Shown: piece after piece, positions 32,068 through 64,000 of the stretch
How the letters are laid out: every line of letters starts with the position of its first letter
Position numbering within the stretch: position 1 is the stretch's first letter
Virus record (IMG/VR): IMGVR_UViG_3300027985_000843
Location: 186,001 to 250,000 of that record
Direction: 5' to 3' (one strand)
Length of the DNA: 64,000 nt
The notes under the pieces: generated by a model
Told to the model about the DNA's origin: nothing
Databases searched by the model: none
The model's input: only the letters and a program-made list of their open reading frames with translations
Made by a program: the position numbers and the translations under genes

Positions 32068-32074
32068 CGGTGTA
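32068..32074 (+). promoter_or_regulatory. CGGTGTA element 10 nt before ATG 32085
   Basis: Same motif and spacing on the plus strand. Confidence 0.65.
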
Positions 32075-32084
32075 TGATCCGATC

Positions 32085-58319: not shown

Positions 58320-60397
<2,078 letters not shown>

Positions 60398-60398
60398 G

Positions 60399-60830
60399 CT
60401 ACTCCTCATCCTCCGAATCGTTCCAACCAGGGTCATCGAGCAGACGTGACCAACAAGTCGGGGACTCGGGCTGTGGGTCCAGACCAAAGATCCCCTGAAG
60501 CTCTGACTGGACCCGGCTCTCCGAAGTGTTCTGACGAAGGCCCAGACAGGATCGGATCACTTCCCCCAACGGACGAGAAGTCAGCTTGATGCGCCTGTAT
60601 GTACCATCAGGCAGAACCTCGATGATGTTGTGAGCCTTGAAGTTCAGGGCCTTGGGGAGGCTGGTAACCCTGTCCACCACGCGAGCCGATGGGCATAGGA
60701 TCGACAACCGGCCATCAAAGTGGAAACGACAGTCAGGGTACAGCTCTTGAATGCGGATGAGGGCCTCACGTCGGCGCTCCAGCTGTGACAGCAAGACGGT
60801 GACTTCACGAGCTTTGGAGGCTAAAGGCAT
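60399..60830 (-). CDS. Hypothetical protein (143 aa)
   Basis: CGGTGTA lies exactly 10 nt upstream of the ATG. Confidence 0.6.
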   Translation of the reverse strand: MPLASKAREVTVLLSQLERRREALIRIQELYPDCRFHFDGRLSILCPSARVVDRVTSLPKALNFKAHNIIEVLPDGTYRRIKLTSRPLGEVIRSCLGLRQNTSESRVQSELQGIFGLDPQPESPTCWSRLLDDPGWNDSEDEE

Positions 60831-60840
60831 GAGGGATCTC

Positions 60841-60847
60841 TACACCG
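60841..60847 (-). promoter_or_regulatory. CGGTGTA element 10 nt before ATG 60830
   Basis: Recurring motif with the same spacing. Confidence 0.65.
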
Positions 60848-60873
60848 ACAGGCAGCCTGGCTTGTTCGTTACG

Positions 60874-61461
60874 TCACGCGACGCGGAGGAAGGGAGCCCA
60901 CTCTTCGGGGGCCTGACGGGGATCGATTCTCGGACCGCACATGGGCAGAGTCTTCGGTTGTACCGGGACAGACAGCAGCTGCATCCCAGCCTCTTCCGGC
61001 GTGCGGTTCGCCTTATGGCTGTTGCAAGCAGTACAGGCCATCACAATGTTGTCCCACACAGTCTTGCCGCCCTTGCCACGAGGTACGACGTGTTCGTACT
61101 CCAGCTGGCTCATGGGCAGCACCGTGCCGCAATACTGACACGAGAAGTTGTCGCGCAGGCAGACGTTGAGCTTGCTGAACTTCACCCCGGACTTGACGGA
61201 TCGCACCTTCCGACGAAGGACGGCCACAGCCGGCACCTTGATCGTCAGGGACTCGGTGTCCGTTCCGATGACCTGCCGAAGAGCCCGACGCAACTCGGGG
61301 AACTCTCGGAGGTGATTGGGTCCGACGACGGTCACGATCTCGTCGTACTGAACGAGAACCTCGACCGTGCCACGGAACATTCGGGTGATGGCATCTTTCC
61401 AGTCCACAATCTCGTGGGGGATGTATGCCTTCGTAAGGATCAAAGTCTGCGTGAACGACAT
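60874..61461 (-). CDS. HNH endonuclease (McrA-like)
   Basis: RDNFSCQYCG..EYEHVVPRGKGG..NIVMACTACNSHK. Start moved to MSFTQT. Confidence 0.9.
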   Translation of the reverse strand: MSFTQTLILTKAYIPHEIVDWKDAITRMFRGTVEVLVQYDEIVTVVGPNHLREFPELRRALRQVIGTDTESLTIKVPAVAVLRRKVRSVKSGVKFSKLNVCLRDNFSCQYCGTVLPMSQLEYEHVVPRGKGGKTVWDNIVMACTACNSHKANRTPEEAGMQLLSVPVQPKTLPMCGPRIDPRQAPEEWAPFLRVA

Positions 61462-61524
61462 GGTAGTTACCGTTTCTTTCTCACGACTGTCTCCATAGAC
61501 GCAAGAGCTTCTCGCGTCTGACCT

Positions 61525-61553
61525 ATGAAAAAGCCCCCGACTCTCGGAGGCTT
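61525..61553 (-). terminator. Intrinsic terminator directly after the tmRNA
   Basis: Minus strand AAGCCTCCGA-GAG-TCGGGGGCTT, then TTT. Confidence 0.8.
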
Positions 61554-61919
61554 TGGTGGAGATGTGGGGAATCGAACCCCAGTCCAAGACAGCTTCAAAG
61601 TCGTCTCGCTCGCGTGCGTAGCTGGTCTACCCTTCCAGCAGGGTCACTGGCCTTTCAACCAGCATGCGGGTATTCACATTAATCTCATCCGGTGGGCATC
61701 GGACCCCTTGCAGTTTTTCACCGGACCAGCTCGTGTGGTTTACACCTCGGGGGTACTCGAACTCCTCCCCCTTCGATGGCCTGTCTCTACCTAAGCAGCG
61801 ACGGGCATTGCAGAATTGTCATTCGCAATTGTGTTCTGTCTGGTTCTTCAAGGGGGGCCTGACAAACCCCCTGCACGATCAACGTCCTCTCCACTACCCT
61901 GTCGAAACCGATCATCCCC
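61554..61919 (-). ncRNA. ssrA: tmRNA, 366 nt, tag (A)ANDNSAMPVAA
   Basis: 5' GGGGATGATCGGTTTCGAC and 3' GGGGTTCGATTCCCCACATCTCCACCA. The tag frame 61826-61791 reads gcg aat gac aat tct gca atg ccc gtc gct gct tag. Confidence 0.95.
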
Positions 61920-61964
61920 AGAGGATACGGCCATTGTAGACCCCCGAAGGGGGCGGACCGTACC

Positions 61965-62051
61965 TGGTGCTCAGGGAGGGACTTGAACCCTCACGTCCAC
62001 AAGGGACAACAGTTTTTGAAACTGCCGCGTCTGCCATTTCGCCACCTGAGC
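61965..62051 (-). tRNA. tRNA-Leu(CAA)
   Basis: Cloverleaf with anticodon loop TTCAAAA, long variable arm and encoded CCA. Confidence 0.93.
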
Positions 62052-62139
62052 AAATGTCCGCCGACCGAAGTGCCGGCAGACTGGGGGCCAAGTTTCCCTG
62101 GCACCTTCCACCACTTCCTGACCCGAGGGTCGGGGAAGA

Positions 62140-62370
62140 TCAGAACCTTATATCATGAACCCTACACCACTCGGCATAGTTGACCCACACAAATCGGTCA
62201 TGCTTGCAGTTCGGGCATGGCCTCTTGCTGGGCCTGGACCGCCATGTGTGGCCGCAGCTACAGCACTTGTAGACAGCACAACCACTGCACTGACATTCCG
62301 TACGCCACGAGCCGGACCCGGGGAACCCTTCCTCGACGGTCGTTCTCGTGATTGTCCTGCGCTTATTCAC
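62140..62370 (-). CDS. Small Zn-finger protein starting at tRNA position 76
   Basis: CCSCGH..CPNC..VWVNY. The GTG start follows the CC of the tRNA 3' end. Confidence 0.55.
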   Translation of the reverse strand: MNKRRTITRTTVEEGFPGSGSWRTECQCSGCAVYKCCSCGHTWRSRPSKRPCPNCKHDRFVWVNYAEWCRVHDIRF

Positions 62371-62446
62371 GGTGCGTCCCCCCGGATTTGAACCGAGACA
62401 CGCCCAGTTATGAGCTGGGGGCTCTGACCTATTGAGCTAGGGACGC
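62371..62446 (-). tRNA. tRNA with CAT anticodon (elongator Met or Ile2)
   Basis: Cloverleaf with loop CTCATAA and G1:C72. It lacks the three consecutive G:C anticodon-stem pairs of an initiator. The 3' end reads ACCG rather than ACCA. Confidence 0.88.
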
Positions 62447-62628
62447 GCACACTCCGCACACCGAGCCTTCTCTTTGGGCGCTTCTCCACGATACACCTTC
62501 TGGTGGCCGCATTCCAGCGTCACCGTGATGATGTCGATCCCTCGACGCCAGCTGAACGCGCCACCCCGAACCGACGTGCGATCCGGTTCCTTCTCGACCT
62601 TGCGGCCTACAATCGCTCGGTATGTCAT
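62437..62628 (-). CDS. Small Zn-binding protein with its stop codon inside the tRNA
   Basis: LECGH..RCAEC. CGGTGTA lies 10 nt upstream of the ATG. The TAG is at tRNA nt 8-10. Confidence 0.65.
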   Translation of the reverse strand: MTYRAIVGRKVEKEPDRTSVRGGAFSWRRGIDIITVTLECGHQKVYRGEAPKEKARCAECARP

Positions 62629-62638
62629 GGGAGGACCA

Positions 62639-62645
62639 TACACCG
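62639..62645 (-). promoter_or_regulatory. CGGTGTA element 10 nt before ATG 62628
   Basis: Recurring motif with the same spacing. Confidence 0.65.
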
Positions 62646-62646
62646 C

Positions 62647-62865
62647 TCAGTCGAGCGGTACCCCCTCCAGCGTCCTGTGGATGGTCCGTATGGCCCACCC
62701 CACCGCATCTTTCAAGGGGACTCGATGGAACTCCTTGCCACACTCCGTACACTGACGGAAAAACTCTCTCGTCTTGAGGTCGACATGATTCCACAAGACG
62801 CCCTTACATCCCGGGTCCTCACAAGGAGGGCCTACGGGCTCGAACTGGGGGATATTTGTTGTCAT
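62647..62865 (-). CDS. Small Zn-ribbon protein whose ATG shares the A of the tRNA CCA
   Basis: MTTNIP..CEDPGC..CTECG. Confidence 0.6.
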   Translation of the reverse strand: MTTNIPQFEPVGPPCEDPGCKGVLWNHVDLKTREFFRQCTECGKEFHRVPLKDAVGWAIRTIHRTLEGVPLD

Positions 62866-62951
62866 GGTGGCCCTCCCGGGACTCGAACCCGGACACCCAC
62901 GAGGGGTAGCGGGGTTTAAGCCCGCCGCGTCTGCCATTTCACCAGAGAGCC
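62865..62951 (-). tRNA. tRNA-Leu(TAA)
   Basis: Cloverleaf with loop CTTAAAC, long variable arm and CCA. Confidence 0.93.
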
Positions 62952-62952
62952 G

Positions 62953-63028
62953 TGGTAGCCGGTGCGAGGATCGAACTCGCCTAGAACTGCTTGTAAAACA
63001 GCCACCGTCGCCAGACGGTTCACCGGCC
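62953..63028 (-). tRNA. tRNA-Val(TAC) with atypical D arm
   Basis: 7-bp acceptor stem, 5-bp T stem, loop TTTACAA, A73 and CCA. D arm is ACCGTC-TGGC-GACGGT. Confidence 0.8.
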
Positions 63029-63550
63029 GTGAAGCACCTCCTGCACCCACAAGGTGTTGAGGCGGAGAATCTCCTCCCCGATGCGACGATTGATCTCTCG
63101 GTGGGCCTCGTACATACGGGGCGTAAACTTCCTGTATCGCAAGTGATCCATAGCGGTGCAATCATTCTTGACCCTAGCCCACCCCCACTTGGCGTCAACC
63201 TTCTGACCCCACAACAGAAGAGGCACCGCTTCATACCCGTCGTAGACGTAGTACGGGACGGGTTCGGGGATGCCCTTGAACGCCCGTCGACGGCCAATTT
63301 TACGGGCGATCCACCGAACGACGCAGAAGCCATACTCGCGATCCCGGCCACCAGCTCCATACTCGAAGCCGATACGGCACTTCCCACGGTCGTACACCAG
63401 CTCCTTCTCGGTGAGAGGGCCGTGGATGCCGGAGGTCTCCCAGCTCAAGCCCATGAAGGTGTGAAAGGGTCGGTAGTTCAGGCTCAAGAACTCGACCATC
63501 CTGGCCTGAGCCTTGCGACTCCGGCAGGGCACTGCGATGGCGTAGCCCAT
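63020..63550 (-). CDS. Hypothetical protein (176 aa) with its stop codon inside tRNA-Val
   Basis: Starts 1 nt after the upstream stop. The TGA is at tRNA nt 7-9. Confidence 0.65.
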   Translation of the reverse strand: MGYAIAVPCRSRKAQARMVEFLSLNYRPFHTFMGLSWETSGIHGPLTEKELVYDRGKCRIGFEYGAGGRDREYGFCVVRWIARKIGRRRAFKGIPEPVPYYVYDGYEAVPLLLWGQKVDAKWGWARVKNDCTAMDHLRYRKFTPRMYEAHREINRRIGEEILRLNTLWVQEVLHGR

Positions 63551-63551
63551 G

Positions 63552-63830
63552 CTAGTCCTCGTTCAAGGTGCCCTTGTTGAGGATCAAAAGGCTCATAATC
63601 ACGAACCCCTCTTCAAGACCAGGGAACTCCCCGTGCTTCAAGAGGTGCGTCACCTTCGCGACCACATGTCGACCGGTGAACTTCTTCGTGATGGGGTTCC
63701 ATTCATGCAGGTCCAACAGAGACCCGACCTCGAAGCCACGGTCATCCTTCCGCAGCTCGTAGGTCTTGATACCGTCCCAGACAGCCATGAAAGCCGAGGG
63801 CCATGTCTTGAGCCTATGTAGCTTCTGCAT
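63552..63830 (-). CDS. DUF3850/ASCH-like (PUA-fold) protein
   Basis: HRLKTWP..F..V..G.KTYELRKDDRGFEVG..L.L.EW..TGR. TGGTGTA lies 10 nt upstream of the ATG. Confidence 0.8.
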   Translation of the reverse strand: MQKLHRLKTWPSAFMAVWDGIKTYELRKDDRGFEVGSLLDLHEWNPITKKFTGRHVVAKVTHLLKHGEFPGLEEGFVIMSLLILNKGTLNED

Positions 63831-63840
63831 GACCCTAAGA

Positions 63841-63847
63841 TACACCA
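63841..63847 (-). promoter_or_regulatory. TGGTGTA element 10 nt before ATG 63830
   Basis: Recurring motif with the same spacing. Confidence 0.6.
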
Positions 63848-63848
63848 C

Positions 63849-63935
63849 TGGTCGGCACGGGGGGAATTGAACCCCCACGGTCGCGAGGACCACCAGGGCC
63901 TAAACCTGGCGCGGCTGCCATTACGCCACGTGCCG
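63849..63935 (-). tRNA. tRNA-Leu(TAG)
   Basis: Cloverleaf with loop TTTAGGC, long variable arm and CCA. Confidence 0.92.
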
Positions 63936-64000
63936 GTGCACGGCGCGGGAATCGAACCCGCCTATGCCATCGCGTGAAGATGGTGCCCTCCCAGAGTGCT
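63936..64000 (-). tRNA. tRNA-Val(CAC), partial (5' end beyond the window), atypical D arm
   Basis: Anticodon arm CCATC-TTCACGC-GATGG, T arm GCGGG-TTCGATT-CCCGC and A73. Confidence 0.75.

What the first reader, a model, noticed from the sequence alone, without database searches (positions are those of the whole stretch)
62140..63550. tRNA-punctuated operon: stop codons inside tRNA 5' ends and start codons at tRNA position 76, upstream of a tmRNA
Seen in the sequence: ORF 63020..63550 stops (TGA) at nt 7-9 of tRNA-Val(TAC), and ORF 62437..62628 stops (TAG) at nt 8-10 of tRNA-CAT. ORF 62647..62865 starts with the A of the tRNA-Leu(TAA) CCA. ORF 62140..62370 starts with a GTG whose G replaces the A of CCA, which explains the odd ACCG end. 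In both start cases an SD-like run (GGAGG or GGGGGGA) lies 6 nt upstream, paired inside the T/acceptor stems. Established: RNase P cuts at tRNA nt 1, RNase Z cuts after nt 73, and tmRNA rescues ribosomes on non-stop mRNA. Inference: tRNA maturation would strip the stop codon from the upstream mRNA, creating a substrate for the phage's own downstream tmRNA, and would release CC-AUG/CC-GUG near-leaderless mRNAs. Alternatively, a ribosome terminating in the 5' acceptor strand could open the stem and expose the SD and start at the tRNA 3' end, so the tRNA acts as a translational coupler. Two independent cases of each geometry argue against chance.
Basis: partly seen in the sequence, partly recalled or inferred. 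Interest (0 to 1): 0.85.

Follow-up and report, generated by a model that had tools for sequence, protein, structure and literature searches.

The report
Phage genes sharing ends with tRNAs
In a 372-kb phage, four real small protein genes sit between tRNA genes so tightly that they borrow stop or start codons from the tRNAs; this is a genuine, partly conserved but largely precedented packing arrangement, and its link to the phage's tmRNA is unproven.

Summary
On the minus strand, orf176 stops (TGA) at nt 7-9 of a non-canonical tRNA-Val(UAC). orf63 stops (TAG) at nt 8-10 of tRNA-CAU. orf72 starts with A76 of tRNA-Leu(UAA). orf76 starts with a GTG directly after ACC of tRNA-CAU. A tmRNA and a terminator close the array.

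All four ORFs are real genes. orf176 belongs to a large family, and orf76 has a 64% homologue. orf72 and orf63 have dN/dS of 0.08 and 0.25 against a 78%-identical relative (L011).

L011 keeps both testable junctions in register. It lacks orf176 and orf76, whose homologues elsewhere have no tRNA neighbours.

The stops are nucleotides the tRNAs need anyway: TAG at nt 8-10 occurs in 5 of 10 array tRNAs, and TGA is kept in L011 without orf176. ACC-G ends occur without ORFs.

There is precedent. T5 has annotated CDS/tRNA overlaps. A T4 segB paper proposes that processing during tRNA-Arg maturation cuts off the segB stop codon. [quoted passage not shown]

Best reading: a compacted, indel-prone tRNA/ORF array in which processing and translation exclude each other on any one RNA. 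Nothing supports a designed tmRNA or coupling mechanism. The start-at-76 junction is the unusual part.

The parts
63849..63935 (-). tRNA-Leu(TAG). The third tRNA of the array; tRNA-Gln and tRNA-Val(cac) lie just beyond the window end.
   Evidence: ARAGORN; Rfam tRNA 51.6 bits.
63837..63846 (-). GGTGTATCTT motif, 6 nt before the ASCH ATG. Candidate -10/TSS-like or processing element.
   Evidence: The motif occurs 7 times in the window against 0.47 expected. It is conserved in L011 with the same 6-nt spacing to an ATG.
63552..63830 (-). ASCH/DUF3850 gene (92 aa).
   Evidence: Pfam PF12961, E=2.5e-23, residues 5-80; PHROG 986 RNA-binding protein.
63020..63550 (-). orf176. Its last 2 codons and TGA stop are tRNA-Val(tac) nt 1-9.
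   Evidence: 379 representative homologues, the closest at 57% identity. AF2 pLDDT 93.9. The C-terminal tail after the conserved W168 is variable across the family.
62953..63028 (-). Non-canonical tRNA-Val(TAC) with G8-A9.
   Evidence: Read from the sequence. Rfam tRNA-Sec 34.9 bits. The L011 orthologue scores 45.8 bits as tRNA, with compensatory pairs 3-70, 50-64 and 52-62.
62865..62951 (-). tRNA-Leu(TAA). Its 3' strands contain GGGAGGG, and A76 is the A of the orf72 ATG.
   Evidence: ARAGORN; Rfam 47.7 bits; sequence.
62647..62865 (-). orf72, a four-Cys zinc-ribbon-like protein.
   Evidence: The L011 orthologue is 78% identical at the amino-acid level, with dN/dS 0.083. Codons 2-12 differ only synonymously. 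The ATG at nt 76 is the only conserved start.
62635..62644 (-). GGTGTATGGT motif, 6 nt before the orf63 ATG.
   Evidence: It lies in an 18-nt block identical in L011 (62654-62637) while the following spacer diverges.
62437..62628 (-). orf63. Its last codons and TAG stop are tRNA-CAT nt 1-10.
   Evidence: The L011 orthologue (P0153) is 76% identical, with dN/dS 0.25. The upstream GTG extension is not conserved.
62371..62446 (-). tRNA-CAT (Met or Ile2 type), ending ACC and then the G of the orf76 GTG.
   Evidence: ARAGORN; Rfam tRNA 61.5 bits.
62140..62370 (-). orf76, a Cys-rich zinc-ribbon-like protein with a GTG start.
   Evidence: A 64% identical homologue occurs in L006, with its ATG start aligned within 2 residues. 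GTG is the first start after an in-frame stop.
61965..62051 (-). tRNA-Leu(CAA).
   Evidence: ARAGORN; Rfam 56.9 bits.
61554..61919 (-). tmRNA with tag ANDNSAMPVAA.
   Evidence: ARAGORN; Rfam RF00023 114.5 bits, full length.
61528..61551 (-). Intrinsic-terminator-like hairpin followed by UUUUU, directly after the tmRNA.
   Evidence: RNAfold -17.1 kcal/mol, z=-2.9.
60874..61470 (-). HNH endonuclease gene downstream of the array.
   Evidence: Pfam HNH_5 E=1.8e-15; PHROG 16726.

Best explanation
This is a very compact, co-oriented tRNA/tmRNA array of a 372-kb phage. Small accessory protein genes have been inserted, or left behind by deletions, between the tRNA genes with no spacer. The upstream ORFs simply run into the tRNA and end at the first stop that the tRNA's own constrained bases provide: U8-A9-G10 gives UAG, and U7-G8-A9 gives UGA in the odd tRNA-Val. 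This costs nothing, because the affected C-terminal tails are unconstrained. The downstream ORFs begin at tRNA position 76, and their SD-like purine run lies inside the T/acceptor 3' strands.

The consequence is inferred, not shown. On any one RNA molecule, tRNA maturation and translation of the neighbouring ORF exclude each other. RNase P removes the last codons and the stop of orf176 and orf63, giving a non-stop mRNA that is handled by any ribosome-rescue system. 3'-end maturation removes the SD, and usually the start codon, of orf72 and orf76. Proteins would therefore be made only from unprocessed precursor, or from transcripts that begin at internal promoter-like motifs, probably at low level. 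The tmRNA sits in the array because it is a tRNA-like gene needing the same transcription and processing. The evidence does not suggest it serves these ORFs.
For: Shown:
- Exact geometry.
- tRNA-tRNA spacers of -1 to 2 nt in the same array.
- All four ORFs are real genes.
- orf176 and orf76 homologues occur without tRNAs in L002, L008 and L006. L006 is syntenic (response regulator ... GroEL).
- L011 lacks ASCH, orf176 and orf76, and its spacers there are 91, 74 and 7 nt where the window has 820, 1 and 319 nt, so the array is indel-prone.
- TAG at nt 8-10 is present in 5 of 10 array tRNAs, and TGA nt 7-9 of Val(tac) is kept in L011 without orf176.
- orf176-family tails after the conserved W vary from 0 to 17 aa.
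- Two junctions stay in register at dS 0.6-1.4.

Precedent:
- T5 has annotated CDS/tRNA overlaps of 6-24 nt.
- DSS3P8 and BCP8-2 have ORF-to-tRNA spacers of 1-4 nt.
Against: GGAGG is kept before the orf72 start in both relatives, although three acceptor pairs changed. The background for a 5-mer SD is 2.6%. This hints at selection on translation from the unprocessed, folded region, which is more than passive compaction. The two conserved junctions sit in an otherwise indel-rich array. No transcript, processing or protein data exist. Only one diverged relative is available.
Confidence: 0.6

Rival explanations
1. This is a selected regulatory device. The tRNA acts as a switch or coupler. A ribosome terminating in the 5' acceptor strand opens the stem and exposes the SD and start at the 3' end. 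RNase P and RNase Z processing deliberately create non-stop mRNAs for the phage tmRNA and near-leaderless CC-AUG or CC-GUG mRNAs.
For: The stop at nt 8-10 and the start at nt 76 lie on the same tRNA-CAT. GGAGG is retained before orf72 in both relatives. Modelled accessibility of the orf76 SD and start rises from 0.10/0.23 to 0.32/0.41 when a ribosome footprint is imposed on the orf63 stop. The L011 tRNA-Leu(taa) lacks CCA (A-CU-AUG), so an RNase Z-type cut would leave a 2-nt leader. ASCH and orf63 have leaderless-like spacing behind a conserved motif, which suggests the host may translate leaderless mRNAs. The tmRNA is in the same array.
Against: The coupler geometry is not conserved. L011 has the orf63 stop in tRNA-CAT but no orf76. 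In the window, no ORF terminates in tRNA-Leu(taa). The stops are pre-existing tRNA bases. SD-like runs also occur in tRNAs with no ORF (Arg(ccg), L011 tRNA-CAT). The modelled opening is modest. Tagging would only destroy the proteins. The tmRNA link is circumstantial.
Confidence: 0.15
2. The array is not one operon. A phage promoter-like element (GGTGTATNNT) starts separate, leaderless or near-leaderless transcripts at ASCH and at orf63, and possibly one for tRNA-CAT. Part of the ORF expression would then be independent of tRNA-containing precursors.
For: The motif occurs 7 times in the window against 0.47 expected, with 6 on the coding strand and mostly intergenic. It lies exactly 6 nt before the ATGs of ASCH and orf63, both of which lack a 4-nt or longer SD core. 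It is conserved in L011 at both sites, 6-7 nt before an ATG, while the spacer sequence before orf63 diverged.
Against: No sigma-70-type promoter was found and no -35 element is evident. The motif could equally be an RNase site or an RNA element. It does not apply to orf72 and orf76, whose upstream sequence is tRNA. There are no transcript data.
Confidence: 0.3
3. This is an artefact. The small ORFs are not genes, and the overlaps are chance open frames next to tRNAs in GC-rich DNA.
For: orf72, orf63 and orf76 have no Pfam or PHROG family. The gene caller on L012 did not call orf76. Few relatives exist.
Against: dN/dS is 0.083 for orf72 and 0.25 for orf63. orf76 has a 64% homologue in a lower-GC phage. 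The orf176 family has 379 representatives and a pLDDT-94 model. GC3 in these ORFs is elevated (0.69-0.77), as in the window's genes.
Confidence: 0.03

Closest known systems
Phage T5 (and T4) tRNA gene clusters with interspersed small ORFs and homing endonuclease genes
   Same: Both have co-oriented tRNAs with short spacers and small ORFs plus an HNH gene among them. In T5, same-strand CDS 3' ends are annotated inside tRNA 5' ends: T5.057/tRNA-Met 6 nt, hegC/tRNA-Ser2 14 nt, hegD/tRNA-Gln2 23 nt, T5.069/tRNA-Asn 24 nt. [quoted passage not shown]
   Different: No T5 or T4 ORF in the annotated regions starts at a tRNA 3' end; their spacers are about 17-25 nt or more. In the T4 RefSeq annotation, segB ends 5 nt before tRNA-Arg. 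Those clusters have no tmRNA. The ORFs here are zinc-ribbon-like proteins of unknown function, not endonucleases.
[quoted passage not shown]
   Same: The same idea: a same-strand CDS whose stop lies inside a t(m)RNA gene should become a non-stop mRNA when the RNA is matured, and hence a tmRNA substrate.
   Different: It is rare in bacteria: 250 upstream and 106 downstream overlaps among 115,660 t(m)RNAs, and the authors distrusted the downstream class. Here 2 of 10 array tRNAs have each kind. The downstream starts are fixed by N-terminal conservation. The genome is a phage carrying its own tmRNA.
Mitochondrial tRNA punctuation model
   Same: tRNAs directly abut mRNAs in a polycistronic precursor, so tRNA excision defines the mRNA ends. 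Gene overlaps with tRNAs occur there too.
   Different: In mitochondria, incomplete stop codons are completed by polyadenylation. Here complete stop codons lie inside the tRNAs and would be lost. Bacterial-type SD sequences are used. Only some ORFs are flanked by tRNAs.
Translational coupling by ribosome-driven opening of RNA structure (e.g. MS2 coat/replicase, rpmI-rplT); from general knowledge
   Same: At tRNA-CAT, the orf63 stop lies in the strand that pairs with the region just upstream of the orf76 start.
   Different: The structure here is a functional tRNA. The arrangement is not conserved in the one relative. The effect is untested.
tmRNA genes of huge phages and cluster C mycobacteriophages
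   Same: This is a phage-encoded tmRNA. tmRNAs have been reported in huge phages (PMC7162821), in Bxz1-like mycobacteriophages and in Bacillus phage G (PMC4131195).
   Different: Here it is the last gene of an array that also contains stop-in-tRNA ORFs. No functional link between the two has been shown.

Membership tests
Phage tRNA gene cluster with interspersed ORFs (T4/T5 type) | Several co-oriented tRNA genes with very short spacers | tested here: met
   There are 8 tRNA(-like) genes plus a tmRNA on one strand. tRNA-tRNA spacers are -1 to 2 nt.
Phage tRNA gene cluster with interspersed ORFs (T4/T5 type) | Small ORFs and/or homing-type endonuclease genes among or beside the tRNAs | tested here: met
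   ASCH, orf176, orf72, orf63 and orf76 lie between the tRNAs, and an HNH gene follows the tmRNA.
Phage tRNA gene cluster with interspersed ORFs (T4/T5 type) | Same-strand CDS 3' ends running into tRNA 5' ends | tested here: met
   The overlaps are 9 nt (orf176) and 10 nt (orf63). T5 has 6-24 nt.
Phage tRNA gene cluster with interspersed ORFs (T4/T5 type) | Transcription as one precursor that is processed into tRNAs | not testable with these tools
   Only indirect evidence exists. Divergent genes lie upstream and a terminator follows the tmRNA. No sigma-70 promoter was found. An internal promoter-like motif is possible.
Non-stop mRNA by t(m)RNA gene overlap (PMC4131195) | A functional CDS on the same strand whose stop codon lies inside a valid tRNA gene | tested here: met
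   orf63/tRNA-CAT: the tRNA scores 61.5 bits and orf63 has dN/dS 0.25. orf176/tRNA-Val(tac): a large protein family; the tRNA is non-canonical but shows covariation.
Non-stop mRNA by t(m)RNA gene overlap (PMC4131195) | RNase P cleavage actually yields truncated mRNA and tmRNA-tagged protein | not testable with these tools
   This needs RNA-end mapping and proteomics.
Mitochondrial-type tRNA punctuation | Incomplete stop codons completed after tRNA excision | tested here: not met
   Complete TGA and TAG codons lie inside the tRNAs, 6-7 nt past the RNase P site.
Mitochondrial-type tRNA punctuation | tRNAs flank essentially every mRNA | tested here: not met
   ASCH/orf176 and orf72/orf63 are adjacent ORF pairs with no tRNA between them. 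orf76 is followed by an 88-nt spacer.
Structure-opening translational coupling | The upstream stop lies in the strand that sequesters the downstream RBS | tested here: met
   This holds at tRNA-CAT only: stop at nt 8-10, start at nt 76, acceptor strands paired.
Structure-opening translational coupling | The arrangement is conserved in relatives | tested here: not met
   L011 has the stop in tRNA-CAT but no downstream ORF. In the window, tRNA-Leu(taa) has a start but no ORF terminating in it.
Structure-opening translational coupling | Ribosome occupancy of the stop frees the SD and start | tested here: inconclusive
   The partition-function model gives P(unpaired) of 0.10/0.23 rising to 0.32/0.41. 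This is thermodynamic modelling of an unmodified tRNA only.
tmRNA | A tRNA-like domain plus a tag reading frame that matches the covariance model | tested here: met
   ARAGORN finds the tag ANDNSAMPVAA*. Rfam RF00023 scores 114.5 bits against a threshold of 47, over model positions 1-374.
Canonical elongator tRNA (for the 'tRNA-Val(TAC)') | A cloverleaf with conserved U8 that passes tRNA detectors | tested here: inconclusive
   The window copy has G8, ARAGORN miscalls it, and Rfam reports only tRNA-Sec at 34.9 bits (below 47). The L011 orthologue also has G8 but is called Val(tac) and scores 45.8 bits as tRNA. There are 3 compensatory pairs between the two copies.

The most novel reading that the evidence does not exclude
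The junctions form a selected processing-versus-translation switch. An SD and a start codon are built into the 3' strands and position 76 of functional tRNAs. The small zinc-ribbon proteins are therefore made only from unprocessed precursor, or from RNase Z-released near-leaderless mRNAs. RNase P-truncated upstream messages are channelled to the phage's own tmRNA. This would tie the output of the accessory proteins to the state of the host's tRNA-processing and ribosome-rescue machinery.
Probability: 0.12. Interest if true: 0.75.

Novelty: new variant of a known kind. Interest (0 to 1): 0.4.

Why it matters
If the junctions are functional, they would show that a working tRNA can double as the ribosome-binding region and start codon of a protein gene, and that phages can trade tRNA maturation against protein output on one transcript. 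The finding also has practical value for annotation. Gene callers and curation rules that forbid CDS/tRNA overlap would miss or mis-start genes like orf72 and orf76. Callers that ignore tRNAs produce false extensions, such as the 113-aa ASCH call. As it stands, this is a well-documented, partly conserved example of a phenomenon already noted in T5, T4 and a few bacteria, found here in an uncultured huge phage.

Tried and rejected
- The word-indexed protein search found nothing for orf76, only itself for orf72, and one relative for orf63.
- The metagenome scan with the orf72 alignment gave only a spurious hit, L013, on a bacterial protease contig.
- Genome-contig scans with the orf63 and orf76 alignments found nothing.
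- The viral scan with the orf76 alignment returned only the source contig and the already-known L006 contig.
- DNA-pattern scans for the tRNA-CAT 5' half and the tRNA-Val(tac) anticodon/T arm returned only the source contig.
- GenBank phages share only tRNA segments with the region.
- The sigma-70 promoter scan found none. Its terminator hits were the D-arm of tRNA-Val and were rejected.
- The orf176 model had no PDB match (best E=0.17). The ESM Atlas gave no usable lead. Function remains unknown.
- Phabba gave no useful precedent.
- I considered that G8 in tRNA-Val(tac) evolved to create the orf176 stop. I rejected this because L011 has the same T7-G8-A9 without orf176.
- I considered the in-frame ATG in the D-loop of window tRNA-Leu(taa) as an alternative orf72 start. 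I rejected it because it is absent in L011 (ACG).
- The thermodynamic fold of the Leu(taa) region did not recover the cloverleaf, so its accessibility numbers were discarded.
Full report
**Source and layout.** The window is part of IMGVR_UViG_3300027985_000843, a 371,739-bp phage contig (window x = contig 186000+x). An identical copy was assembled from another sample (L012). GC content is 59%, and every confident gene in the window is on the minus strand with the usual GC3-rich pattern.

Upstream of the array, genes run the other way: response regulators and a histidine kinase. Read 5' to 3' on the minus strand, the array is:
- tRNA-Gln, tRNA-Val(cac) and tRNA-Leu(tag). The first two lie just beyond the window.
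- An ASCH/DUF3850 gene, then orf176.
- tRNA-Val(tac), then 1 nt, then tRNA-Leu(taa).
- orf72, then orf63.
- tRNA-CAT, then orf76, then tRNA-Leu(caa).
- The tmRNA, a terminator hairpin, and an HNH gene.

Further downstream lie GroEL, clamp-loader subunits, a ribonucleotide reductase, a DNA ligase and a RecD-like helicase.

**Observation check.**
- The TGA of orf176 is nt 7-9 of tRNA-Val(tac).
- The TAG of orf63 is nt 8-10 of tRNA-CAT.
- The orf72 ATG uses A76 of tRNA-Leu(taa).
- The orf76 GTG follows ACC of tRNA-CAT.
- GGAGG and GGGGGGA each lie 6 nt before their start codon.

The tRNA-Val(tac) is non-canonical. It has G8-A9, ARAGORN miscalls it, and Rfam reports only a sub-threshold tRNA-Sec match. 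Its orthologue in L011 has the same G8-A9, is called tRNA-Val(tac), and scores 45.8 bits on the tRNA model. The two copies differ by compensatory changes at pairs 3-70, 50-64 and 52-62. It is therefore a conserved structured RNA.

**Are the ORFs genes?** Yes, all four.
- orf176 belongs to a family with 379 representative sequences at E<=1e-3. The closest is 57% identical over the full length. An AlphaFold model from 41 sequences has pLDDT 93.9, but no PDB match better than E=0.17 and no Pfam or PHROG family.
- orf76 has a 64%-identical homologue in another huge-phage contig of lower GC (L006). That homologue's ATG aligns within two residues of the window's GTG. GTG is the first possible start after an in-frame stop.
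- orf72 and orf63 have orthologues on a 1,187-bp contig, L011, which is 78% identical in DNA. dN/dS is 0.083 and 0.25, at dS 1.41 and 0.62.
- In orf72, codons 2-12 differ only at synonymous sites plus one inserted Thr codon. Translation must therefore begin at the ATG at position 76.
- An in-frame ATG in the window's D-loop, and a GTG at codon 12 in L011, are each absent from the other genome.

**Is the register conserved?** L011 carries this order: Leu(tag), 91 nt, Val(tac), 74 nt, Leu(taa), orf72, orf63, tRNA-CAT, 7 nt, Leu(caa).
- The orf72 ATG again begins at tRNA position 76, although the 3' end there reads A-CT-ATG, with no encoded CCA.
- The orf63 TAG is again nt 8-10 of tRNA-CAT.
- GGAGG is retained before the orf72 start even though three acceptor pairs have changed (GAGGGCC versus AGGAGCT).
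- L011 lacks ASCH, orf176 and orf76.
- The homologues of orf176 (L002, L008-L010) and of orf76 (L006) have no tRNA within the fetched flanks.
- L006 is syntenic with the window (response regulator ... orf76 homologue ... GroEL) but has no tRNAs.

The array is therefore a fluid, indel-prone region. Two junctions are stable, and two are specific to this lineage.

**Where the stops and the ACC-G end come from.**
- TAG at nt 8-10 is simply U8-A9-G10. It is present in 5 of the 10 tRNAs of this array.
- T7-G8-A9 of Val(tac) is present in L011 without orf176. There it closes a 27-codon ORF.
- If ORFs read into these tRNAs in random frames, 18% of tRNA-frame combinations would stop by nt 10, and many frames would run on for tens of codons. 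Only early-stop outcomes are likely to be tolerated.
- The residues encoded by the overlap are dispensable. The orf176 family has tails of 0-17 residues (median 5) after the conserved ...RLxxLW motif. The overlap in orf63 lies after its final CxxC.
- The 'odd' ACC-G end needs no start codon to explain it. Val(cac) in the window, and Leu(tag) and Leu(caa) in L011, also end ACC-G without any ORF.
- Strong SD-like runs also occur in the 3' strands of tRNA-Arg(ccg) and L011 tRNA-CAT, which have no downstream ORF.
- This phage does use SD sequences: 53% of first starts have one, against 13.9% background, and a 5-mer core has a 2.6% background. The conserved GGAGG before orf72 is therefore suggestive. 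The G-run before orf76 is weak.

**Precedent.**
- T5's curated annotation has same-strand CDSs ending 6, 14, 23 and 24 nt inside tRNA genes, plus one ending flush against a tRNA.
- DSS3P8 and BCP8-2 have ORF-to-tRNA spacers of 1-4 nt.
[quoted passage not shown] A similar idea was raised for the T5 endonucleases in the tRNA cluster (PMC2330249). In the T4 RefSeq annotation, segB ends 5 nt before tRNA-Arg.
[quoted passage not shown] They found 250 upstream and 106 downstream same-strand overlaps among 115,660 t(m)RNAs, and regarded the downstream class as probable start miscalls (PMC4131195).
- tmRNAs are already known in huge phages and mycobacteriophages.

What is unusual here is the density (two of each kind among ten tRNAs) and a downstream overlap whose start is firmly established and conserved.

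**Mechanism.** Geometry, gene reality and conservation are shown. The rest is inferred from general knowledge of RNase P and 3' maturation.
- An RNase P cut at nt 1 removes 'GR-stop' from orf176 and 'RP-stop' from orf63, leaving non-stop mRNAs.
- 3' maturation of a CCA-encoding tRNA removes the SD and destroys the ATG of orf72. This normally involves an endonuclease cut downstream followed by exonuclease trimming, and CCA is normally an anti-determinant for RNase Z.
- A cut after nt 73 would leave a 2-nt leader. This would be expected only for the CCA-less L011 version and perhaps for the ACC-G tRNA-CAT.
- Maturation and translation are therefore mutually exclusive on any one molecule, and protein yield is probably low.
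- A partition-function model puts the orf76 SD and start at 0.10 and 0.23 unpaired. These rise only to 0.32 and 0.41 with a ribosome placed on the orf63 stop. That is weak support for coupling.
- The coupler layout is also absent from L011.

**A complication.** The motif GGTGTATNNT occurs 7 times in the window against 0.47 expected.
- Six copies are on the coding strand, and most are intergenic.
- It lies exactly 6 nt before the ATGs of ASCH and orf63, both of which lack an SD core.
- It is conserved at both places in L011, within an 18-nt identical block, while the adjacent spacer diverges.
- It may be a promoter/TSS element that gives leaderless transcripts, or it may be a processing site. 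Either way, the 'single operon' assumption is unproven.

**Verdict.** The best explanation is a compacted phage tRNA/ORF array whose gene ends borrow tRNA nucleotides, so that processing and translation exclude each other. An adaptive switch or a tmRNA-feeding role remains possible but unsupported. The evidence base is thin: one diverged relative and no expression data.

Noticed in passing
window 63846-63837, 62644-62635, 62497-62488, 48555-48546, 12382-12373, 12151-12142 (all - strand); 32069-32078 (+); L011 127-136 and 680-689: The motif GGTGTATNNT occurs 7 times against 0.47 expected. It is strand-biased and mostly intergenic. It lies 6 nt before the SD-less ATGs of ASCH and orf63, and it is conserved in L011. 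It is a candidate promoter/TSS or RNA-processing element of this phage lineage.
   Followed up: partly
window 62535-62492 (- strand, inside orf63): A 44-nt stretch is identical between the window and L011, against a 77% identity background (5 of 5000 shuffles reach this length). Synonymous sites are included. It ends in a copy of the GGTGTAT motif about 42 nt upstream of tRNA-CAT. It may reflect an RNA- or DNA-level constraint, or recent recombination.
   Followed up: partly
window 63028-62953; L011 218-295: tRNA-Val(UAC) has G8-A9 instead of U8 and T at the usual A14 position in both relatives, with compensatory stem changes between them. ARAGORN miscalls the window copy as a 90-nt 'tRNA-???(gg)'.
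   Followed up: partly
L011 143-226 and 293-406: L011 has two micro-ORFs with the same junction style. A 27-codon ORF starts 6 nt after the motif and ends at TGA nt 7-9 of tRNA-Val(tac). A 37-codon Cys-rich ORF starts at the CCA-TG of tRNA-Val(tac) and ends at the TAA anticodon of tRNA-Leu(taa). Whether either is real is unknown.
   Followed up: no
L001 5543-5702; window 62951-62953: tRNA-tRNA spacers in the array are -1 to 2 nt. Val(cac) and Leu(tag) share a base, and Val(tac) and Leu(taa) are 1 nt apart. Several tRNAs lack a complete encoded CCA (ACC-G, A-CTA, A-CAA). One RNase P cut therefore nearly creates the upstream tRNA's 3' end.
   Followed up: partly
window 63550-63020 (orf176): orf176 represents a widespread phage/metagenome protein family: 379 representatives, a conserved N-terminal alpha/beta domain and a C-terminal helix ending in RLxxLW. 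The AF2 model is confident (pLDDT 94). It has no Pfam or PHROG family and no significant PDB fold match.
   Followed up: partly
L006 5000-7400 versus window 58320-64000: The two huge phages are syntenic. In both, a response regulator on the opposite strand is followed by an orf76-type gene and, further on, GroEL. L006 has no tRNAs, ASCH, orf176, tmRNA or HNH in this interval, so the tRNA array is an insertion into an older gene neighbourhood.
   Followed up: partly
L012 5919-6260 (= window 63893-63552): The public gene call for the ASCH protein (113 aa, GTG start) begins inside tRNA-Leu(tag). The DUF3850 match and the conserved motif point to the ATG at 63830 (92 aa). This is an example of a false CDS/tRNA overlap next to the real ones.
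   Followed up: yes
L011 1-38 and 1047-1100: The 5' edge of L011 matches the 3' end of the tmRNA model (E=0.0055, cut off by the contig end), upstream of tRNA-Leu(tag). After tRNA-Leu(caa) there is a T-arm/acceptor-like piece ending in CCA instead of the tmRNA seen in the window. The order of array elements may differ between the relatives.
   Followed up: no
L002 5620-5832: In L002 a 70-aa multi-CxxC zinc-ribbon ORF lies upstream of the orf176 homologue, with weak similarity to orf72 (44% over 25 aa, E=0.012 in a tiny database). Small zinc-ribbon genes may travel with the orf176 family.
   Followed up: no
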